DNA of 64,000 bases, from assembly GCA_013416795.1 (NCBI GenBank), contig RQSC01000016.1:170560-234559 (forward strand). The letters run 5' to 3'. The notes below the pieces were generated by a model. That model did no database searches. It worked only from the letters and a program-made list of their open reading frames with translations, and was not told the origin of the DNA. A program made the position numbers and the translations under genes. Source of the DNA: Prasinococcaceae sp. CCMP 1430 (taxonomy: Eukaryota > Plantae > Prasinodermophyta). Position 1 is the stretch's first letter; the number at the start of each line of letters is the position of its first letter. Of this stretch, positions 36,190-50,446 are shown piece after piece.

Positions 36190-39100
36190 CTACAAATCCG
36201 AGGTGAGCGCGCCGTCCCTGCACAGGCTCATCAGCGCACCCTCGAGCACATACTCGGCGAACTCCTGGAACTCGGGCATCGCCATCACCGCGGCGTCCGC
36301 CGCGGCGTTGGCCTCGGCTTGCCGTTTCGCGAGCACCTCGGCGCTCTCAGCGTCTTCAGGTACGCCGCCGGGCCTCTCCCAAGAGGTGATGGACTCGTAC
36401 GCGGGCACGGTGTGATGCGGTGGGTCAGCGAGGGCTTCGCGAACGGCGTCGCTCACCAGCACGCCGCCGACCATCCGCTTAAGCATGGCGGCCACGAATA
36501 CACTCTCATCCGCGGTGGTTTCGGCGTCACGACCAAGTGCTGCTGCCAGCGGCGTCAAACGACTCGCGGCCTGTGGCTGCAGTTGCGGGGTCATGGCCGC
36601 GCCCATCAGCGAGCGAAAGTGGCTGGCCGAGAGCACCGAGGCCTCGATCCCGAGCAGCAGCACGAGCGGCTCAGCGCCTGCGTGGCCCATAGTGCTCATG
36701 GGTTCATCGGCGAAGAACGACATGCCCTCCGAGTCGGCAGTGGGCGGGACACCACCCGATTGCGCTCGAGTGGCCATCGACGTGGCAGTGCGCATGCGCA
36801 GCGAGGGGTATCGCCGCACCATCGACTCGGTGCCGCACTCAACGACCGACAGTCGCGGGCCAAGCACGCGCGGCGGGCGTTGGTACGGCGCATCGATGGC
36901 CAGAACTTCCTCGCATTCGCCGTCGGTGACGTCTCCGTCGCTACTGAAAGCGTCCGACGTGTGCTCGCCACCGTCGTGTCCGCCGTCGATGCCCATCGCG
37001 CTCGCGTCGCTTGTCCGTCTGGAGGTGCGCCCCACCGAGCCATTGTCATTGCGTTGAAGCTCGCCCACGTGCGTGAACACGCACGCCGCCTGCACCTCAA
37101 ATACCTCGGGCATCGATGCGCTGAGCGTCACCTCGCACGTGGAAGAAGCGCCCCCCGCCAGCGTGCCCTGCATGGGCGACACACGTATGTCCGCCGCCAG
37201 GCGACGTGCGCTCGTGAGGTCCCACTGGAAGGCTAGAGGCGCCGAGCTCGTGTTGGTGACTTTCACCACACGGTAAGAGCGACCATGCGCGCACACAGGC
37301 CCAAATGCCGCCACGGTCGTGCTGAGGCGTGCGCGTTGACCCTCGACTTCGAGTGTCTGCATGGGTGTAAAGCATTGCCACTCGGACTTGGGTAAAGGCG
37401 CCGCGCAGCCCGCTGGCGGGGCCGATGGCTCAGTACCAGGGTGGCCGTGCGCGTCCCGCTCTGGGATGTACCCCTCTGCCACCAGGCTGAGCGTGGCCTC
37501 ATAGTCATCAGATGCGTCGCCGTCGTCACCACCATCGCCCTCGCTGACCGTGGCGACGGACACGGGGAGGGTGACCTCGTATCGATGCGCCTCGAGGGGT
37601 TGGAAGCGCACCTTGACGTGGTCGGTTGCGCCAGGCTCGAGCACACCCTTTGCTCCCTCGAGCAGCTCGAGCACGCGGAACCCATGGTTCTCCGCTTGCA
37701 GCGCGTCGAGCGCGGCCGTGTCGATCGAGTAAGCAAGCGGTGCCGAGCCCACGTTGCGCAGGGGCAGCAGTTGCGCGGGAGGCTCGTCCTCGCCCAGCGG
37801 GACGGGCAGCAGTGGCGTATCGGGCGAAGGTGTGAGCAGACGTGACGTGTCCAGCGGCAGCGTGCGGCCCACCGTGTTGAGACGTACGCGCTTGCCCCGT
37901 TGAAAGCAGAGCAGCATGGGTATCTCATGAACGCCAGCAATGGAGTGACGATACGTGAAGTCAACTGTGACGGTTGCACCAGGTGCGAGGCTACCACGGC
38001 GGGGCGACACTTCAATGATGCCGTTCTCGATGATGAAGTCCTGCCTGCGGTCGTCCTCGGTCTCCGCCTCACCCACGTCCACCCAATTCTCATTTTCCTG
38101 TTCGCGGTCGCCTCGAAGGTGCAGCGACCAGTTGGCCACGAGCCCCGCCGAGCGGTTGGTAAAAGCCACGCGCACCACAGTGGGCTCATCGCCCTCTGTG
38201 CCCCATCCGAGGTCGAAGGGCAGAGACAGGCCCGCCCCGTCCAGAGCTGACATTGCCATGTCCGCGCTGACGGTGAACGAATGCTTGTTGAGCGACACCT
38301 CGGCTTCAGACAGGTCGCAGCTGAGTTCGGCATTGACGCGGTTGACGGCCAGCTGGCGCCACAGGTCGGCTGCGGCCACACCGCGGCAGAAAACTTCGGT
38401 GACGTGCGCAGTTGGGTACGCGGCATTGCCCTGTAGTGTGACGGCAGGCGGTAGCTCGGCACCCTCGCCCTCGGCTGCGTCGATCGCCGACGCCGAGGTG
38501 CGTTCAGTGGATGAGATACACCGGAGCGAGTACTTGACGCGCTTGCGCTCGGCACACTTGACGCTCACGACGACGCTCTTGAACGCGCGCGCGGGGAGCG
38601 CGCCTGCGGGTGCGTCAAAGGTCACGTCTGCCGCCTCGCCGCCCTTCTCCTCGTCCACTGCCACCAAGCGGTACTGCATGTTGCCATCGCTCTGGTTGAG
38701 CAGCGTGATCGGCGCCTGGTATTGCTGGCCCACGAAGAGCGCACCGAGGTCGACACTCGATGGTTCGACTGTGATCGCACCAACGGTGGCCTTGCCGTGC
38801 ACGCTCACCGACAGCGAGTCAGAAACCACGCTCGCGCCCACAGCCGCCACCTCGCAGGTGATTTTGCCTGAAAGTGGCTTGTGCCTGCGAGGCGAATAGG
38901 TGATGCGCACGGGGTGGCGCTCATTTCCCCTCATGGTGCCGCTCGAGGGCTCCACGCTGACGGACTCAGCGAGCCTCGGCGGCACCGTCCACGCAAACTC
39001 GACGGGCGTGCGGCTCTTGTTGTGCAGTGTGACTTCTCGGCGTGACACCGCGCCCACGCACGTCGGCTTGAACGACAGCGAGTTGGCGATGATGCCCTCG

Positions 39101-41568
39101 ATGTCGAGCGTGGGCTTGTGTGCAGCGCCGTGCAGCGGCAGATTGATCGCTGAGCTATTGTTCAGCACAACGGCGGCGCGCTCGGAGATGTGGCACGGCG
39201 CACCCGCCTTGAAGCGCAGCGCGATGAGTTGGAACCCGCGCGCGGGGATGACGCCCTTGCGCGGGCGGGCCGTGAACGCTCGCCCGAGCGCTGCGTCTTG
39301 CACCTCGTAGCGCACAGGCGTGTCACCGGCATTGTTTAGCTGTACTACCTGATGGGCAGCCTTTCCCACCTCGGAGGGCGTGAAATGCACACGCGTGGGG
39401 ACGAAGGCTGCTTTGGGTGTGAACGCTTCACCCGCGCCCGCCGTGAAGGTATGCCCGGTGCAGTGCACAGCTGCGTGCCATGGCGGCACGAACGCGCCCT
39501 CGGCCACCAGTCGGAAGTTGCGCATGGTCTTGACATACGCCGTGCACTCGAGCGTCTGCGCGTAGTAGCAGCCGCTCGATCGCGGGCGAAAGGCTACACG
39601 GAAGGTTGCGCTGCCACCGGAACTCACGTCGGCTTCCTCGGGGTGGACCACGAAGGCGCGCTGCGACTCGGGCAGCTCATGGGTCTTGCTTGTGCTGGCT
39701 GCGGTGCCGCCGTCGACGCGCGTCCACTGAACGGTGATCTTGGCGCCGGTGGTGTTGGTTACACGCAGCTCGCGGTGGTCGCCCGCTCCCATCGGGTCCG
39801 CACCACCGAACTCGAGGTCCGATACGTCGAGGCGTACGGGCGCGTCGTCCTCGGTGCCGGCGGCGAAGTACTCAGCCCATGAGGGCTCCTCTGCGAGCTT
39901 GTTGATGGTGCCCGTCGCTGCGGCGTGCGCGGCCACGTCACCGGCATTGAAGGGCGGCGGGCGCACCGCGTCGCTGAAGCACGTGCCCATAAGTGCGACT
40001 TTCAGCACCTCTCCGCTATCGCGCACCAGGGCGTGGTGCGTCTGCATGAAGTTTGCCGGCGAGTCCGGCGCGAAGGTGACGGTCACGTGCGCCGATCCGC
40101 CTGGTGGCAACACGCCGCTGCCGGGCGAGGAAAATTGTCCCTTGCCAAACCCCGTGCTTTTGCTCAGGCGGAAGACGCCCTGCCCAGGCAGCGCCAACTG
40201 GAAGGTTGCTGGCGAGTCCCTGTTATTGTTGTGTACGTGGAGCACCTTTGACGCGTGGTCGCCTGCGCGCACATCGCCAAAGTCCAGCACCGACGGCGTG
40301 AGCGACATCGAGGGCCCAACAGCCGTGCCCGAAACTGAGAGCGCAGATGTCGTGCATGCCCCCGCTGTGCGCAGCATGAACTGCTCGCACGAGTACGTGC
40401 CAGCGCTCTTAGGGGCGTAGCTTACGCGCAGCGGCGCGCACTCGCCGGGAAGCAGCGTACCCGTCGCTGGTGAAAGCGAGAAGAAGCAATCGCTGGCGGG
40501 CGCGCTGCTTGCGCCGCCGGCGTCGCCGTCCCGGCGCACTGCCGAGTAGCTCGCCGGGACTAAGCCCACGTTTGTGAGGCGCACCTCGCGCTCAGCAACC
40601 TGGCCGACGAGCACCTCGCCGAAGTCGGCCTCGGCGCCGGCGAGCGACAAGTAGGGGTACTTGCCAATGCCCTTGATGTGCATTGAGCAACTCACGTTCG
40701 GCAAGCCCACGACGACGCATGTCGCAGTGGCCACGTGCACCGACGCATCCGACGGCATGAAGGTGGCCGTAAGTGCGGCTGTTTCGCCCGGTGCGAGCGA
40801 TCCACGAGTGGGCTCAACAGTGAACGGCGCGTCGACTTCCCACTCGTATTCGATCGCCACCTCGCCAGCGTTGCTGAGAGTGAGTGGGCGCTCGGCGAGC
40901 TCGCGACATGCGCAGAAGCCGAAGTCCACCGCATCCGGCGCCGCGAGCGCTGCCTGCGGTAGCGCAGCGCGCACTGGGATCGTGAATGAAGCCCAACCCG
41001 CACCTTCCGTTGCGAGGGCAGCCACGCTGAATTCTATGCTATCTTCGTATCGCTCTTTGCGGATGGGACAGAACGAGACAGCCACGCTGCAGCTCATGCC
41101 GGGGCTCAATCTGCGTAGTGCGGCGACACGTGCGGCAGGTCAGCGCACACGTGGGAGCGAGCGGGCGACGGGCGACGACGTGGCAGCGCGCGGGCCAACG
41201 CACGCAGGCGCCTGCGCGCGGACGGGCCATTGCAGGTGCACGTGCGCGCGCGCGCATTCGCACCTGATGGTTTCTGGGAACTCCATGCTGAAATACTTGG
41301 TTGCCGGCAGCTTGTAGCGCAGCCTGACGCTCTTCGTGCTAAGGTTCTTGACGAGTAGCGTCTTGTGATACTCGCCGCCGGGCGACCAGTTGCGCCACTC
41401 AAGCGAGTCGGCGCAGTCGATCCCGAAGAGTGCCGTGCGGTCCTCGCGCGAGAGCGGCGCGGGCAGTGCTTGCGCTCGGACCGTCGGTGCCGCTTTCGTG
41501 ACACTGCGGGCCGGCGGCGCGGCGCCTGCGGCGGTGTGCGGAGAGGCGACCATCACCGCTGGAGGCAT
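36190..41568 (-). CDS. CFAP65: Cilia- and flagella-associated protein 65 (CCDC108/FAP65), repeated ASH/PapD-like Ig domains; exons ~41264-41568 and 36190-41110
   Basis: W..W..G.EYHKTLLVKN...RYKLPATKYFSMEFPETI|RLSPGMSCSVAVSFCPI, repeated DFG...L.N.G Ig units, GIGKYPYL and RTMRNFRLV-like motifs. Confidence 0.85.
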
Positions 41569-42609
41569 TGCGGGGCTCTGTTTCTCGTTCTGCTCGATCA
41601 CGCGCGACTGCGCCGTGCTCTCCCTCTCTACCTGTGTTCCGCGCCGGCCGTGCACGCGATGCAGACAGCTGCAAGCTCGCGGCGTCAGGCGCCAGCGCGC
41701 ACGTGCGCGCGCGCGCGCGCGCGCGCGCGCCCGCTCCCNGCCCCGCCGGCGCGCCAGCGCCCCCGCCGCACCCCGCCAGAGGCTCACCCCGCGGCGGTGC
41801 CCAGCAGCAGCAGAGGCAGCCGGCCGGCGGCCCCTCCGTCGGCCGGTCGGTCGGTCCGTCGCGTCGGGCGTGCGTCCGCCCGGGGAACGCAGCGCGCGCG
41901 GCCGGATCGGGAAACGCGGCCCTGCCCGGCGCCTCCGCCCACCTCCCCATCAAACATTCGGTTCGATGGCCGCTGCGAGACGCCTCGCGCCGACGCCACG
42001 ATCCTCGATTCTGGATCGATCGCGGCATCCGCGCCGGCGACGCGCGGGCGGAGCCGCGCGCGCGCGGGGCGGCGCAACCCTAAAAAAAATAAAAAAAAAA
42101 AAAAAAAAAAAACGGCTGCCGTGAGCGCAGCGGGAGCTGAAGGTTACGGGTGGGTCGCGGCAGGGGGGCGGGGTGAGGGGGGAGAGGGGACGGGGGAGGC
42201 TTGCAGGCGCCACAGCGCGCGCGCGCGCGCGCGTGCGTCGGGGTGGGGGTTGGGGTCGAGTGGAAGGCGGAGGAGGTGGGAGTGCGGCTGACGCGCCTCG
42301 TGCGCTGGCGGGCGCGGCGCGGCGCGGCGCGGGGGTGGCGCCCGGTGCAGGCGTGGGCGACCGTGTGTTGGGGCGGTGCGCGCGCGCGCGTGCCCGTGTG
42401 TGTGTGTGCGCTCTGATTCGTGCGGGGGGAGGGAGGCGGGGAATCAGTGAGGTGACGGAGCTTATCAGACACCCTGGGGACACGCCGCGCCGGTGCAGTG
42501 CGCCGCAGCGTACCGTGACTGCCGTGCTGCGCGACGGGAGCTCTGGCCCGACAGTCTCCGTCGCTGCTGTAAGCTTGCATCGAGCGGGCAGCGCGTGGAT
42601 ATCGCTGAG

Positions 42610-44655
42610 ATGGAGAGCATGGCAAGGGAGGTGCGTCGACGCGCCTCCGCCGCCCTGCGATGCGGGCGGTGTGCCATGCGGTGTGGCGAAGAGCGCTGAC
42701 GCCTCGCGAAAACTCACGCCTGGGTGCTCGCGTGCTGTGTGCTCGCATGTGTGTGCGTTCTCGCATCGCAGGACATGACGCAAGACGACTTACAAAAGGC
42801 CCTCGACAGCCTCGACGATGCCACGAGGCTAAAATTAGACGTAGATGGCGATGGCGAAATCAACGTGGTCGAGTATGAGGCGTTCCTGCGTCGCGCGGAG
42901 GCGGAGCGCTTTGAGATCGCAGAGCTGACGCAGCTGTTGTCGCCCGAGGAGCTCGCGCTGGTGGATGTCGATGGCGACGGCGAAGTCTCGATTGAGGAAT
43001 ACCGCGCGTACCTCGCTGCCCGCGGCACCTTCTTCATATATATGCGCCAGTCGGCATCCGGACGCTGCCGACGAGTGTTGTGGAACGGCACGTCGCGCGC
43101 AGAGCTCCTAGCCCTGTACCTAGACAACTTCTACCCGACCTTTGAGCGGCAGGCGCAGATGGGCAGCTTGTCGTCGCCAGGCCGAAGGTCGTTTAGGACG
43201 AGGCAGGTGGTGGACATAGATGCAGATGTCCGGCGACCGGCCGATGTGCGTTTCGTGCTTCAACACTCGCGATTTGGCGTCTGCTTCACCAACTTTAATC
43301 TCAACGACATCAAAGAGGGCTGCATGCTTTGCGCCCAAGAGATCTTCGCCGACGCGTCGCCGGGTACGATCAGTGCGCAGACGTCGCGCAACGAGAATGA
43401 AGGGGAGGCCTCGGGTGACGGCACCACGCTCTCCCTGCGCGAGCGCGTCTGGATGACGCTGGACGATCCGCTGTTCTCGCCCACCGCTACGGCCATCTTC
43501 GTGTCGATGATGGTCCTCATCGTGCTCTCGACGGTCACTTTCTGCATCGATACCATGCCGCGCATATACGATCACAGCGGGTCGTTCTCTCACCCGCTGG
43601 TGATCATCGAGGCTGTCTGCATTGCGATATTCACCGCCGAGCTCGCCGCACGGTTCTGGGCGTGCCCGGACCGCCGGAGCTTTTCCCGGGACACCATGAA
43701 TCTCATAGATCTTGTGGCGGTCGTACCGTTCTACATCGAGCTCATAGCCACAGGCGTGGAGGTGCCGGGGCTGGCCGTGCTGCGTGTCTTTCGCCTCGTG
43801 CGGGTGTTCCGCCTTTTCAAGATGAATCGTGGGCCCGTGCAAGTGTTTGCGTCGACGATGGAACGCTCGGCTAGGCCGCTGTACATGCTGCTGTTTTTCG
43901 TGCTCATCGCGCTGGTCGTCTTTTCCAGTTTGCTCTATTTTGTGGAGACGCCGGTGTACGATGACGGCCTGCGCTCGCACGTGCGACACGTCGGCTGGGA
44001 GTGCGATTTCACGTTCGCGTACGAACCGCCGCTGCGCTACTCAGTGCTCGATGCCACGCAGCGTGAGCGCAACTCGGGGCTCGACGACCCATGCGTGCTC
44101 CTCCCGCTCGAACAGCAGGATGTTGATGCGTTGGCCGCCGATGCGGATGCTGCGGACCCGCTGCTCCCACACGCGTACTACCGCTGCCCTTCGACGTACA
44201 GCAATGGAAACAATTGCGCCAAGGTGTGGGAGGAAACGCCGTTCGAATCCATCCCGGCCACCATGTGGTTCTCGCTCGAGACCATGACGAGTCTTGGCTA
44301 CGGTGACTTCGTGCCAGTGTCGGCGCTGGGCAAATCGCTGTGCATGTTCATCATGGCCAGCGGCCTGCTTGTGCTCTCCCTCCCAATCAGCGTGGTGGGC
44401 AACAACTTCACAACAGTGTACCAGTACATGCAGATGCAGGAGCGCAGGGAGAAGCTGGCCGAGCAGAATCGTTTGGCGCGCGAGGAGGAGGCTGCTCTTG
44501 CGACCAAACAGCGCAGCGCCAGGCGCCAAAGTCTGCTTGGTTCGGTCGGGAAGGCGCTCCTCAGCGAGCGGCCCGTGAAGAGGGCGGTCGGCTCGGCGGC
44601 ACACACTGAATACAACAGGAAAGCCAGGTCGCCCAAAGCTGCGGGGGGCGAATGA
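42610..44655 (+). CDS. Voltage-gated K+ channel (Shaker/Kv-type 6TM) with two N-terminal EF-hands; probable exons 42610-42630 and 42772-44655
   Basis: EF loops DVDGDGEINVVE and DVDGDGEVSIEE; S4 LRVFRLVRVFRLFK; pore SIPATMWFSLETMTSLGYGDFVP; S6 LSLPISVVGNNF. Confidence 0.93.
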
Positions 44656-44926
44656 CACGAATGCATCAGAATCCCCACGATGTAGTAATACAGCAGGCGT
44701 GATGGCGGCGTCCAAGCACCCCACCAACCGCCTCGTCGCCGACGACTTGCCCCTCGCCGCGCGCGCCCTTCGCAGCCCGCAGGCGTAGCTTCCCCACGCC
44801 CTCGAGCACCCCCGAGCCCATCGCCTCCGCGCTCCCGCGAACACGGCGAAGTCGGTAGCGGAGAGCCTCGAGAGAGCGCAGGGCGTGCGTTGCGTCCAAC
44901 CCTGATCAAAGCTCACGCGAGGATGT

Positions 44927-47437: not shown

Positions 47438-48509
47438 ATGGCGGTGGTCTCCCTCAGCGCGCGCTAGCGCCCTTCCTTGCTTTCGCTCGCGCCGTTGTGT
47501 GCATGCGCGCTCGCGCGCCGCGTGTGCGGCGGCGGCGCCGAGGCCGCTCCAGGCGCTCGCCAAGGTGAGGCGCGCGTGCGGCGTGAGTGTGTGGGCGTGC
47601 GGGCGGATGGATGGCGGGGGCAGTCATGCATGCACGCGGCGTGTGGAGCGCGTCAGCAGGGGGCCGACGGCGCCGCCCACGCGCTAGCGGGAGGCGCGCA
47701 TTGCGGCGCGAGTACGCACCTCGCGACCGCGTGCGCCAGCCCAGCCCCTGTCCAGTGGGCGATAGGTCCTTGCCTGTCGCTGACACCAGCACCGACTGCG
47801 CTTTCACCACCCGATCTCTGTGCTCGCTCACGCGCCCGCCCCCAAGGGTGCCACCGCTCTCGCCGCCGCGGCGACGCTCTCGCTGAGCGCTGGCGTAGGC
47901 GCTGCGAACGCCGAGGAGTTCGACATCCTGGCCGCGGGCGCACCTGAGAAGTACGTGTATGACGACGCCGGCGCGCTGTCGATCACCACCAAGAAGAAGA
48001 TCTCCAGCCAGCTCGGCGCAATCAAGGGTGCCTCCGGGGTGACGCTTCAGGTTGTGACCACGCGCAAGCTCACGGTCGAGCCTGACGTGTACTCTTTCTC
48101 GGAAACCATCCTGAAGAAGTGGTACCCTGATGAGGCCGATCGCTCCAACAAGGGCGTGCTGCTGATCGTGACCTCGGCCAACGAGGGCGCGATTGCCGCG
48201 GGCCCGAACTTCCAGAGCAAGATTTCTGGTGACCTGGTCGACTCGATTGAGCAGGCCAACATCCCCTACTACTGCGGGGAGGAGAAGGTCAATGAGGCGA
48301 CCACGTCGAGTGTCACGCGCATCGTCAGCTCGGTCCTTGGCCAGGCGGACCCTGGGCCGCCCGCGCAGGCCAAGGTGCAGGTGGGCTCCAACTACAAGAC
48401 CTACGAGGAGGTCTCGAACAAGCGTGACAAGTACGTCACCGTTGTCGGCGGTCTCCTCGTCATCGCGTTCGTCGTGCCGATGATCCAGTTCTGGGGTTAC
48501 ACGAAGTAA
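47438..48509 (+). CDS. TLP18.3: Thylakoid lumen 18.3 kDa protein (TLP18.3/Psb32, TPM domain); exons 47438-47564 and 47847-48509
   Basis: Bipartite transit peptide (A-N-A|EEFDIL), YVYDDAGALS, KWYP, EGAIAAGPNF, SNYKTYEE and C-terminal TM VVGGLLVIAFVVPM. Confidence 0.92.
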
Positions 48510-48937: not shown

Positions 48938-49219
48938 GAAATTCGAACGAGCCCACGCGCGCGTTGACTGATGACGGCGCGGCTGGCGGCACAGCGCCCG
49001 GCGCACCACCGCCCCCCCCACTGCCGGCCCCAGCACAGCCCTCCCAGACCTGCGCCCGCGCGCGCGCCCACGGGGGTGCGATCGATCGATACATAGATAC
49101 AAAACGCGCCGCGCCGCGCCGTGTGCGGGGGGGGGGAGAGTGGGGGAATGTCGCCGGCGGATGGCGGCGACATCGGCGGCGCGCGGCTGGTGGGCGGCGC
49201 GAGCAGCGACGCCGACGCA

Positions 49220-50446
49220 ATGGCGGCGCGTGCTGCGCGCATGGCCGAGCGGCTGGACGCGTCGGCGGCGGCGCGCAGGGCGGTGAATGAGGCGCGGCGC
49301 GAGGCGGTGCAGAATCAAGCGTCCGAGGCCGAGTCGGTCAGTGGGTTCCTCAGCACGCTCAACGCAGACAGGGCACAGGCGGAGGCCGACATCCAGGCTG
49401 CGACCACCGGCGGGCGGATCGACGAGCTCATCGGCACCCTCGCAGCGCTAGAGGAGCGCGTGGCCAAGGCAGCGTACTTCCTTCCGAACTACGACGTGCG
49501 CGCGGCGCAAGCTGCGTTGTCCGCGGCACGCAAGGCTGCCGACGCGCGCCGCACGGCCGTAGCGCCACGCAAGAAGTTCGCCTTCAAGAAGAAGATTCAC
49601 AAGAGCTCTGCGCCGATTCCAACGCAGCAGCCAGCCGAGCAGTCGATCGCCGCCGACGGTGCGGCCGACACCCCGCTGCCCGCCATCCCGCCAGGGCGAG
49701 GCGAGGCAGGGGGTGCTGCCGGGCGAGACGTAGTTGTCACGAGCGATGGCGGTGACTACACGTTCGCGGGACTCCGCGAATGCCGGGTGGTCATACGTGG
49801 GGCGTGCACCGCGCTGCGGCTACTGAAGTGCTCGGGCTGCCAAGTGTTCGCCGCACCGGTCGAGGGGTCGTGCTTCGTTGATGCGTGCGACACGTGCGTG
49901 TTCCACGTATCGACCCGGCAGATTCGCATTCATAGCACCAAGGTGCGTGGCATGCCTGCGCGCACACAGCGGCAAAGTAGTGCCGCCAGCGCGTGCGAGG
50001 GGCCGATTGGGCGCCTGCGTTGAGCCTGCGCCAGTCCGGCGGGCGTTGTCCGCGCGGGTTGCGCGAATGGCGCCCCTCGCAATAAGTCCCACGCGCCTGA
50101 GTGCGCCGGACCCGCCCCTTCGCTCGTTTGGCCTCGCTGACTCGCCGCGCCGTATTACCCACCGCAGCGCACGGACTTCTACCTGAGGGTGCTCAGCCGG
50201 CCAATCATCGAGGCCTGCGACGCTGCGCGCTTTGCGCCGCTCGAGGGCGTCGATGCCGAGGGGGCGTACGCGGGTGCCGCGCAGGCGCTTGCCGCGGCGG
50301 GTATGGCCGACGCCACCGACTTGTGGAGCTCGGTGGACGACTTCCTGTGGATCAAGGAGGTCCAGTCGCCGCATTGGAGCGTGCTGCCTGAGGGCGAAAG
50401 GAAACGCGCGACAGAGTGCGCACTCGCGGTAGGCGTGGCCAAGTAA
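49220..50446 (+). CDS. TBCC: Tubulin-specific chaperone C; exons 49220 (or 49148)-49942 and 50168-50446
   Basis: AAYFLPNYDVR...APRKKFAFK, beta-helix C-CAP domain, STRQIRIHSTK|RTDFYL..SRPIIE and VDDFLWIKEVQSPHWSVLPE. Confidence 0.92.

What the first reader, a model, noticed from the sequence alone, without database searches (positions are those of the whole stretch)
42610..43440. EF-hand pair fused to an animal-type Kv channel in place of the T1 domain: candidate Ca2+- and voltage-gated K+ channel
Sequence: two canonical 12-residue EF loops (42838-42873 DVDGDGEINVVE; 42964-42999 DVDGDGEVSIEE), then a ~140-aa unrecognised domain, then a Shaker-type S1-S6 with an R/K-rich S4 and TxxxxGYGD filter. 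Established: metazoan Kv1-4 channels use a BTB/T1 N-terminus and get Ca2+ sensing from separate KChIP/calmodulin subunits; plant Shakers are CNBD-type; BK uses RCK domains. I know of no characterised channel with this exact architecture. Inference: a self-contained Ca2+ sensor, possibly repolarising flagellar or Ca2+ action potentials. It shares a divergent promoter region with CFAP65.
Basis: partly seen in the sequence, partly recalled or inferred. Interest (0 to 1): 0.8.

Follow-up and report, generated by a model that had tools for sequence, protein, structure and literature searches.

The report
EF-hand-tagged Shaker-like potassium channel
A marine green alga (Prasinoderma coloniale) expresses one gene that joins a pair of calcium-binding EF-hands and a ubiquitin-like domain to a T1-less, Shaker-like voltage-gated potassium channel, so it may sense calcium and voltage in one protein, although calcium gating has not been tested.

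Summary
The gene has two exons: 42610-42630 and 42772-44655, with a GT..AG intron seen spliced in RNA contigs. It encodes 634 aa, identical to a Prasinoderma coloniale transcriptome ORF.

Domain order (numbered from the Met at 42775):
- Two canonical EF loops at exactly the stated coordinates.
- A beta-grasp (ubiquitin-like) domain, residues 85-192.
- A flexible linker and a Kv1-type pre-S1 helix.
- S1-S6, with S4 charges R-R-R-R-K-R, a 97-aa four-cysteine S5-P insert and the filter TMTSLGYGD.

There is no T1/BTB, RCK or CNBD domain. The solved structures closest to the model are Kv1-Kv4.

The channel belongs to a green-algal clade of T1-less Kv-like channels that share the ubiquitin-like domain. 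Only this protein and one marine-metagenome orthologue (56% identical) carry the EF pair. The EF pair is therefore an add-on to that family, not a T1 swap in an animal Shaker.

Other protist Kv-like channels carry EF pairs at the C-terminus. These sit elsewhere on the tree and appear in no paper found by five full-text searches, so cis EF-hands on Kv cores seem to have arisen more than once.

Calcium gating is inferred only. The CFAP65/flagellar link is weak, because the two genes lie tail-to-tail in the orthologue.

Verdict: new variant of a known kind, moderately interesting.

The parts
42437..42630 (+). Exon 1: 5' UTR (the transcript starts at or before 42437) plus the first 7 codons, ATG at 42610 (MESMARE)
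   Evidence: RNA contig X1 record 1 and X4 record 12. The frame upstream of 42610 holds no earlier ATG after the stop.
42631..42771 (+). Intron, 141 nt, GT..AG
   Evidence: The joint 42628/42770 (cut +2) is seen in contigs of runs X1 and X4. The spliced ORF is identical to transcriptome protein P0130.
42772..44655 (+). Coding part of exon 2, ending at stop codon 44653-44655. The 3' UTR runs on to about 44694-44743.
   Evidence: ORF list; RNA contigs reach 44694 (X1) and 44743 (X2).
42781..43026 (+). EF-hand pair (residues 3-84, numbered from the Met at 42775). Ca2+ loops are at 42838-42873 and 42964-42999.
   Evidence: Pfam EF-hand_1/5/6/7; PS00018 matched twice; AF2 helix-loop-helix pair at pLDDT 83-94; PDB sequence hits to Entamoeba CaBPs, the calmodulin C-lobe and calcineurin B.
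43027..43350 (+). Beta-grasp (ubiquitin-like) domain, residues 85-192, with a disordered loop at 128-150. It follows the last EF helix without a linker.
   Evidence: AF2 models; VIA-align Z 8-9.4 to UBL/PB1 domains, and all top 50 hits are beta-grasp; Foldseek PDB and AFDB hits to UBL/PB1; conserved in EF-less relatives; hhalign against T1 gives probability 0.1%.
43351..43479 (+). Low-confidence linker (residues 193-218), then the pre-S1 helix LRERVWMTLDDP, which aligns with the Kv1 motif (QRRVWLLFEHP in P0018)
   Evidence: pLDDT <50 for residues 194-215 and helix 221-230; alignments.
43480..43830 (+). Voltage-sensor domain S1-S4. S4 is at 43771-43830 with R337, R340, R343, R346, K349 and R352. 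F286/E289 in S2 and D312 in S3 are conserved.
   Evidence: Pfam Ion_trans; invariant columns; S4 string.
43831..43947 (+). S4-S5 linker helix and S5
   Evidence: AF2 helix 352-391. It aligns column for column with the Kv1 S4-S5 linker of P0018.
43948..44238 (+). 97-aa beta-rich S5-P insert with Cys410, 440, 471 and 481. It is shared by the green-algal clade and absent from animal Kv1-4.
   Evidence: Alignment A1; Cys positions; AF2 strands.
44239..44424 (+). Pore helix, selectivity filter TMTSLGYGD (44281-44307) and S6 with P-I-S in place of the Shaker P-V-P
   Evidence: Pfam Ion_trans_2; sequence.
44425..44652 (+). Cytoplasmic C-terminus. A long helix continues from S6 to about residue 597, followed by a basic disordered tail containing RRQS.
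   Evidence: AF2 helix 517-597; only 26% identical to the orthologue.
36190..41568 (-). Neighbouring CFAP65 gene, head-to-head. Its probable start codon is near 41568, about 1 kb from the channel ATG.
   Evidence: Pfam Ig_CFAP65 domains with E down to 1e-78; upstream exon ORF.

Best explanation
[quoted passage not shown] Its cytoplasmic N-terminus carries a calmodulin-lobe-like EF-hand pair, joined without a linker to a ubiquitin-like beta-grasp domain.

Shown here:
- the gene model and its expression;
- the domain order;
- canonical Ca2+-ligand residues in both loops, kept in the 56%-identical orthologue;
- a complete Shaker-type voltage sensor and a Kv1-like S4-S5 linker;
- a GYGD pore;
- the absence of T1, RCK and CNBD domains.

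Inferred:
- Four subunits form a depolarisation-activated, K+-selective outward rectifier in a membrane whose outer face is oxidising. The four conserved cysteines of the S5-P insert suggest this.
- Cytosolic Ca2+ binding to the two EF sites changes the EF/beta-grasp module and so shifts voltage dependence, inactivation or availability.
- The result would be a cis-encoded counterpart of KChIP-Kv4 or calmodulin-Kv7 regulation, and a functional analogue of BK or plant TPC1 as a detector of voltage and Ca2+ together, giving negative feedback on Ca2+-carrying depolarisations.
For: - Gene model and expression: spliced RNA contigs, and identity of the spliced ORF to transcriptome protein P0130.
- Domains: Pfam EF-hand, Ion_trans and Ion_trans_2.
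- EF loops: both match PS00018 here and in orthologues P0002, P0140 and P0142, against 0.002 matches expected by chance.
- Selection on the EF region: it is 56% identical with no gaps between the orthologues, against 26-27% in the linker and the C-terminal tail.
- Type of EF pair: by sequence it resembles Ca2+ sensors (calmodulin C-lobe, calcineurin B, Entamoeba CaBP).
- Structure: AF2 model with pLDDT 79 and EF pair at 83-94. Foldseek's best solved matches are Kv1.3, Kv1.2, Shaker, Kv4.2 and Kv2.1 at E 1e-15 to 1e-13.
- Voltage sensor: S4 R/K pattern and counter-charges are invariant across relatives.
- Recurrence: EF pairs also occur on other Kv-like cores, at the C-terminus, in separate parts of the tree. 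Recurrence fits a selected regulatory role.
Against: - No functional data of any kind exist. Ca2+ binding, K+ selectivity and gating polarity all rest on sequence.
- The filter is S-L-G-Y-G rather than T-V-G-Y-G in both EF-bearing orthologues, and one environmental variant (P0133) has G at the Ser position.
- EF pairs can be structural, or can serve as docking or dimerisation modules.
- Only two 90%-identity clusters carry this layout, so there is little comparative power.
- The ~25-residue low-confidence linker between the N-terminal module and pre-S1 gives no obvious rigid path to the gate.
- The AF2 alignment contained only two EF-bearing rows.
Confidence: 0.5

Rival explanations
1. The EF pair is not an acute gating sensor. 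It is a constitutively Ca2+-loaded structural, assembly or docking module. Together with the ubiquitin-like domain, it would replace T1 as a platform for tetramer assembly, trafficking or partner binding.
For: - The beta-grasp domain matches UBL/PB1 domains that oligomerise, such as the PKD ubiquitin-like dimerisation domain 6ra0 (Z 8.6) and the aPKC and NBR1 PB1 domains.
- EF-less relatives keep the beta-grasp domain, so it has a function independent of Ca2+.
- The flexible linker to pre-S1 argues against tight mechanical coupling.
Against: - Both loops keep the full canonical ligand set across 56% divergence. This is more typical of working Ca2+ sites of the sensor type (calmodulin-like hits).
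- Independent C-terminal EF fusions sit directly after S6, where gating is usually modulated.
- T1-less Kv channels assemble through their membrane cores (established knowledge).
Confidence: 0.3
2. The protein is a channel but not a depolarisation-activated, K+-selective one. It could be a weakly selective cation channel, or a hyperpolarisation-activated channel of an internal membrane.
For: - The filter variant S-L-G-Y-G occurs only in the EF-bearing clade, whereas relatives have T-V-G-Y-G.
- S6 has P-I-S instead of P-V-P.
- The large S5-P insert has an unknown effect.
- Localisation is unknown.
Against: - GYGD and the pore helix are intact.
- The long Kv1-like S4-S5 linker and the closest structural matches to Kv1-4 favour domain-swapped, depolarisation-activated gating.
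- No organelle-targeting extension is evident by eye at the acidic N-terminus.
Confidence: 0.12
3. The fusion is an annotation or assembly artefact, or the main product starts downstream so that most channel protein lacks the EF hands.
For: - The RNA evidence consists of assembled contigs, not single long reads.
- No single contig spans the whole 2.3 kb; the X1 contigs break at 43100-43115.
Against: - The EF hands and the channel lie in one uninterrupted ORF of exon 2.
- X2 contig 42857-43365 bridges the X1 break.
- An independent transcriptome ORF of 634 aa is identical.
- The same layout occurs in a 56%-identical orthologue on metagenome contigs up to 25 kb long.
Confidence: 0.03

Closest known systems
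Shaker family Kv1-Kv4 of animals and some choanoflagellates
   Same: Six-TM core with pre-S1 motif, S4 charges R1-R4/K5/R6, S2/S3 counter-charges, a long S4-S5 linker and a GYGD filter. These are the best solved-structure matches (E about 1e-15).
   Different: It lacks the T1/BTB domain that defines the family (PMC11287247). It has an EF pair plus a ubiquitin-like domain instead. It also has a 97-aa cysteine-bearing S5-P insert, P-I-S rather than P-V-P in S6, and an S-L-G-Y-G filter. On the tree it sits in a green-algal clade, not inside the T1 groups.
T1-less 'Shaker-like' or 'Kv-like' channels of protists (Pozdnyakov et al. 2020, PMC7576140; Jegla lab 2024, PMC11287247), here the prasinophyte clade (Pyramimonas, Tetraselmis and marine metagenome members)
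   Same: Same core, same ubiquitin-like N-domain and same S5-P insert. The 24-row clade has 99% SH-aLRT support.
   Different: None of the other members collected has EF-hands. They have a T-V-G-Y-G filter.
Kv4-KChIP and Kv7/SK/EAG-calmodulin complexes
   Same: An EF-hand Ca2+ sensor acting on the cytoplasmic face of a Kv-type tetramer. The EF pair here is calmodulin-lobe-like.
   Different: In those complexes the sensor is a separate four-EF subunit bound in trans. Here a two-EF module is encoded in cis at the N-terminus.
Plant TPC1 and TPK1/KCO1
   Same: Cis-encoded cytosolic EF-hands on a member of the voltage-gated-like channel superfamily. TPC1 needs both voltage and Ca2+ (established knowledge; PMC9783492 and PMC8619664 were listed).
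   Different: TPC1 is a two-repeat, non-selective vacuolar channel with its EF-hands between the repeats. TPK1 is a 4TM/2P channel without a voltage sensor and with C-terminal EF-hands.
BK (Slo1) channels
   Same: The predicted job is the same: a K+ channel opened by voltage together with Ca2+.
   Different: BK uses C-terminal RCK domains and an extra S0 helix. No RCK domain is present here.
Kv-like channels with C-terminal EF pairs, absent from the papers my searches found (P0219, P0223, P0225; P0213 has T1 + Kv + EF; ESM Atlas clusters mostly haptophyte or ciliate)
   Same: An EF-hand pair fused in cis to an Ion_trans/Ion_trans_2 core.
   Different: The EF pair lies after S6, not before S1. 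There is no ubiquitin-like domain. P0219 and P0225 have a charge-poor S4. They sit in distant parts of the tree, so the fusions are independent.

Membership tests
Shaker family proper (Kv1-Kv4) | Cytoplasmic T1 (BTB_2) tetramerisation domain before S1 | tested here: not met
   No BTB_2 hit at E <= 1. hhalign of the N-domain profile against a T1 profile gives probability 0.1%. The predicted fold is beta-grasp, not BTB. A weak ESM-feature lead to BTB_2 (score 0.72, below the tool's own reliability level) was not borne out.
Shaker family proper (Kv1-Kv4) | Six-TM core with a charged S4 and a domain-swapped S4-S5 linker | tested here: met
   Ion_trans E 1e-42; S4 charges R/R/R/R/K/R; Foldseek hits to Kv1-4 at E 1e-15. 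Domain swapping itself is inferred from linker length only.
Kv-like (T1-less) voltage-gated K+ channels | K+ selectivity signature T/S-x-G-Y/F-G-D in the P-loop | tested here: met
   TMTSLGYGD at 44281-44307; Ion_trans_2 E 5e-11. Selectivity itself cannot be tested here.
Kv-like (T1-less) voltage-gated K+ channels | Groups on the tree with eukaryotic Kv-like channels rather than CNBD or prokaryotic Kv | tested here: met
   A 56-row Kv-like group is separated from the CNBD rows and three others (P0222, P0023, P0025) at 100% SH-aLRT. The query lies in a 24-row green-algal clade at 99% (quick tree).
EF-hand Ca2+-binding domain | Paired helix-loop-helix with 12-residue loops carrying ligands at positions 1, 3, 5 and 12 and Gly at position 6 | tested here: met
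   Two PS00018 matches 42 residues apart; Pfam EF-hand_1 and EF-hand_5 above their cut-offs; AF2 helices flank both loops.
EF-hand Ca2+-binding domain | Actual Ca2+ binding and a Ca2+-dependent conformational change | not testable with these tools
   Needs ITC, 45Ca overlay or spectroscopy on residues 1-84 or 1-192.
BK/Slo Ca2+-activated K+ channels | C-terminal RCK domains | tested here: not met
   No RCK, TrkA or BK_channel Pfam hit. The C-terminus is a 76-residue helix plus tail.
CNBD-type channels (plant Shakers, HCN, EAG) | C-linker and cyclic-nucleotide-binding homology domain | tested here: not met
   No PF00027 hit. The CNBD-bearing hits form a separate group.
Ubiquitin-like beta-grasp fold (N-domain, residues 85-192) | beta-beta-alpha-beta-beta(-beta) grasp topology superposable on UBL/PB1 domains | tested here: met
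   VIA-align Z 8.0-9.4, rmsd 2.3-3.2 A over 69-83 residues, and all top 50 hits are beta-grasp. Foldseek PDB probability reaches 0.98 but E is 0.05 or worse; AFDB E 1.5e-3. This rests on a predicted model only, and Z values near 8 are close to the tool's background.

The most novel reading that the evidence does not exclude
Kv-type channels have acquired their own cis EF-hand Ca2+ sensors at least twice. One case is the N-terminal EF pair coupled to a ubiquitin-like domain in Prasinodermophyta. The others are the post-S6 EF pairs of the protist lineages. On this reading, the P. coloniale protein is a self-contained detector of voltage and Ca2+ together, built on a different plan from BK, SK, TPC1 or Kv4-KChIP.
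Probability: 0.35. Interest if true: 0.7.

Novelty: new variant of a known kind. Interest (0 to 1): 0.55.

Why it matters
In animals, K+ channels that integrate Ca2+ and voltage are built with RCK domains (BK) or with separate EF-hand subunits (KChIP, calmodulin). A Kv core with a built-in EF pair would be a third solution, and a compact single-gene one.

It also occurs in the earliest-diverging phylum of green plants. That bears on how excitability and Ca2+ feedback were wired in the first green algae.

The gene offers a small, intron-poor construct for structure-function work on how an N-terminal sensor can talk to a Kv gate without T1.

The shared ubiquitin-like N-domain and the cysteine-bearing S5-P insert also define a green-algal Kv-like subfamily that Pfam does not cover and that none of the papers I searched or read mentions.

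Tried and rejected
- **Trypanosomatid origin with no introns.** This was my first guess, from the GC-rich long ORFs. It was rejected by the prasinophyte homologues, the spliced RNA and the P. coloniale cluster member.
- **N-domain as a diverged T1.** Rejected by Pfam, hhalign probability 0.1% and the fold searches. The ESM-feature lead to BTB_2 (score about 0.7) is below the tool's reliability level.
- **Exhaustive HMMER search with residues 1-235.** Apart from the protein's own 50%-identity cluster, it returned only generic EF-hand proteins. None has a channel domain. It did not recover the ubiquitin-like domain of the relatives, which is too divergent.
- **ESM Atlas shape search with the whole model.** It gave only Kv and BTB clusters at TM <0.5 and added nothing.
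- **Literature searches for a described EF-hand Kv channel.** They found only trans EF-hand partners, TPC1/TPK and general surveys. Pozdnyakov 2020 does not mention EF-hands, and the P. coloniale genome paper does not mention ion channels, potassium or calcium.
- **Naming the organisms of the C-terminal EF channels.** This failed: the clusters carry no names.
- **Earlier scan notes.** They hold nothing on this gene.
- **My relaxed EF-loop regex.** It was one residue too long, so its hits are meaningless. Only the phmmer part of that call is used.
Full report
**Observation.** The stretch 42610-43440 is the 5' part of one protein-coding gene on the + strand.
- Contigs of two RNA-derived runs, one of them a marine metatranscriptome, show exactly this joint. 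RNA contigs cover 42437-44743 without a gap once X2 contig 42857-43365 bridges the break between the two X1 contigs.
- Exon 2 is one uninterrupted ORF to the stop at 44653-44655.
- The spliced translation (634 aa) is identical to P0130, a complete ORF from a Prasinoderma coloniale MMETSP transcript that UniRef lists only as 'EF-hand domain-containing protein'.
- The window's GC content (65%), the thylakoid-kinase note on the same window and the genome paper (GC 69.8%; PMC7455551) fit that organism.
- Both EF loops sit at the coordinates given (42838-42873 and 42964-42999).
- Pfam reports EF-hand_1 and EF-hand_5 above their cut-offs, Ion_trans (E 1e-42, residues 243-550) and Ion_trans_2. It reports no BTB_2, RCK or CNBD.

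**Anatomy** (residues numbered from the Met at 42775, as in the 626-aa gene calls).

*N-terminal module.*
- Residues 3-84 form a helix-loop-helix pair at pLDDT 83-94. By sequence it is closest to Entamoeba CaBPs, the calmodulin C-lobe and calcineurin B.
- The last EF helix runs straight into strand 86-92 of a second domain (85-192), with no linker.
- That domain was modelled alone from 12 homologues, with core pLDDT around 90 and an internal disordered loop. It is a beta-grasp: every one of the top 50 VIA-align matches is a ubiquitin-like, PB1 or RA-type domain. The best are the tubulin cofactor B and E UBLs (Z 9.4 and 9.2), the USP11 UBL, the PKD ubiquitin-like dimerisation domain and the aPKC PB1.
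- Foldseek agrees, but weakly: PDB E is 0.05 or worse with probability up to 0.98, and AFDB clusters give E 1.5e-3.
- It is not a T1 domain. Profile-profile comparison with a T1 alignment gives probability 0.1%.

*Linker and voltage sensor.*
- A low-confidence linker (residues 194-215) leads to the pre-S1 helix LRERVWMTLDDP. This aligns with the Kv1 pre-S1 motif.
- S1-S4 carry the conserved S2 Phe/Glu, the S3 Asp and an S4 that reads R-x-x-R-x-x-R-x-x-R-x-x-K-x-x-R.
- The S4-S5 linker aligns residue for residue with that of a cnidarian Kv1.

*Pore and C-terminus.*
- Between S5 and the pore helix lies a 97-residue, beta-rich insert with four cysteines (410, 440, 471, 481). Three are nearly invariant in the family.
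- The filter is TMTSLGYGD, and S6 has P-I-S where Shaker has P-V-P.
- S6 continues as a long helix to about residue 597 and ends in a basic tail.
- The nearest solved structures for the whole model are Kv1.3, Kv1.2, Shaker, Kv4.2 and Kv2.1, at E 1e-15 to 1e-13.

**Relatives.**
- Word-indexed searches of 5.8 billion proteins, and an exhaustive HMMER pass over 1.8 billion representatives, found the EF + beta-grasp + Kv layout in only two 90%-identity clusters.
  - One is the P. coloniale cluster, which includes 96-99% identical environmental variants.
  - The other is P0002 (648 aa, 56% identical) from Tara Oceans and other marine assemblies.
- P0002 keeps canonical ligands in both loops.
- Between the two orthologues, the EF region is 56% identical with no gaps, the beta-grasp 44%, the pre-S1-to-S6 core 71%, and the linker and C-terminal tail only 26-27%. 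The EF pair is therefore conserved like a folded, functional domain.
- The next relatives are 35-45% identical in the core. They include Pyramimonas and Tetraselmis proteins and many marine metagenome proteins. They share the beta-grasp N-domain and the S5-P insert but have no EF-hands.
- In a quick maximum-likelihood tree of 63 channel cores, the two EF-bearing proteins pair at 100% SH-aLRT. They sit in a 24-row clade of these algal channels at 99%. This clade lies inside a broad Kv-like group that is separate from the CNBD channels and a small group of three other rows (P0222, P0023, P0025), and it is not nested in the T1-bearing groups.
- Prasinodermophyta branch before the Chlorophyta/Streptophyta split (PMC7455551), and the base of the clade is unresolved. 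One change on the tree explains the pattern either way, so gain and loss of the EF pair cannot be told apart.

**Other EF-hand/Kv fusions.**
- The ESM Atlas feature search pointed to clusters with EF-hand + Ion_trans + Ion_trans_2, mostly haptophyte, and an EF-hand + Ion_trans cluster that is mostly ciliate.
- A channel-only homology search recovered four such proteins.
- Pfam places their EF pairs after S6. In P0219, P0223 and P0225 the pair starts about 25 residues after the pore. P0213 has T1 + Kv + a C-terminal EF pair.
- They fall far from the query on the tree, and P0219 and P0225 have a charge-poor S4. Cis EF-hands on Kv-like cores are therefore recurrent and independent.
- I found no paper describing any of them.

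**Mechanism.**
- The shown and inferred steps, and the proposed mechanism, are set out under the best explanation; they are not repeated here.
- One possible cis target for the Ca2+-loaded EF pair is the basic amphipathic C-terminal stretch (KQRSARRQSLLGSVGKALL). This is a low-confidence idea from sequence alone.
- The main rival is that the EF/ubiquitin-like module serves assembly or docking rather than acute gating.
- I put about 0.5 on Ca2+-modulated gating, 0.3 on a structural or assembly role, about 0.1 on atypical selectivity or polarity, and about 0.03 on an artefact or an EF-less main isoform.

**The flagellar idea.**
- The upstream minus-strand gene is CFAP65 (Ig_CFAP65 domains, E down to 1e-78). 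Its probable start is near 41568, about 1 kb from the channel ATG. The head-to-head arrangement is therefore real.
- On the orthologous metagenome contig L001, the CFAP65 orthologue (60% identical) is again adjacent but tail-to-tail with the channel. A shared promoter is therefore not conserved, and the adjacency may be plain synteny.
- P. coloniale has not been seen with flagella, although it retains 217 flagellar genes (PMC7455551). A flagellar role remains pure speculation.

**Comparison and novelty.**
- The protein works like a Shaker-type Kv, but it fails the defining test of the Shaker family, the T1 domain (PMC11287247).
- It is best filed as a member of the T1-less Kv-like channels (PMC7576140), in a green-algal subfamily marked by a ubiquitin-like N-domain and a cysteine-bearing S5-P insert.
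- The cis N-terminal EF pair is a new variant on that theme. Its closest functional analogues are Kv4-KChIP and Kv7-calmodulin (trans EF-hands), TPC1 and TPK1 (cis EF-hands on other channel architectures) and BK (RCK-based).
- It is not categorically new. Its interest depends on an untested Ca2+ effect, so I score it 0.55.

Noticed in passing
window 43948-44238; also P0003-P0013 and P0148-P0161: The whole green-algal Kv-like clade carries a ~80-100-aa beta-rich insert between S5 and the pore helix, with three or four conserved cysteines. Animal Kv1-4 lack it. It is probably a disulfide-bonded extracellular cap of unknown function.
   Followed up: partly
window 43027-43350; N-termini of P0003-P0013: Pfam has no family for the N-terminal ubiquitin-like (beta-grasp) domain of this channel clade. 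It may be the clade's counterpart of T1 for assembly or docking.
   Followed up: partly
L001:2606-6355 (-) and window 36190-41568 (-): CFAP65 is adjacent to the channel gene in both P. coloniale and the 56%-identical metagenome relative. It is head-to-head here and tail-to-tail there, which implies a local rearrangement that kept the two genes as neighbours.
   Followed up: partly
P0213; P0187, P0194, P0196 (proteins): P0213 (one metagenome or metatranscriptome contig) combines T1 (BTB_2), a Kv core and a C-terminal EF pair. P0187, P0194 and P0196 are T1-bearing Kv proteins whose Ion_trans match spans about 390-435 residues, which implies a very large pore-loop insert. Their organisms are unknown.
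   Followed up: no
P0133 (96% identical environmental variant of this protein): This variant has Gly instead of the filter Ser506 (TMTGLGYGD) and Asn at position 5 of EF loop 2. It may be a natural variant or an assembly error.
   Followed up: no
window 42082-42112 and 41739: The otherwise ~75% GC intergenic region between CFAP65 and the channel gene holds an A8-T-A22 tract. It also holds a single N, and the window contains 3280 N in total in masked stretches.
   Followed up: no
window 47820-48509 (+) and 49121-50023 (+): Downstream ORFs encode a TPM-domain protein (E 5e-17; it recalls the thylakoid-lumen protein TLP18.3, from memory only) and a tubulin cofactor C homologue (TBCC_N + TBCC).
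   Followed up: partly
window 43402-43422 and 44553-44575: Metatranscriptome contigs of runs X3 and X4 touch these two ~20-nt stretches and continue into unrelated sequence. These are most likely short chance or paralogous matches from other organisms, not an alternative splice.
   Followed up: no
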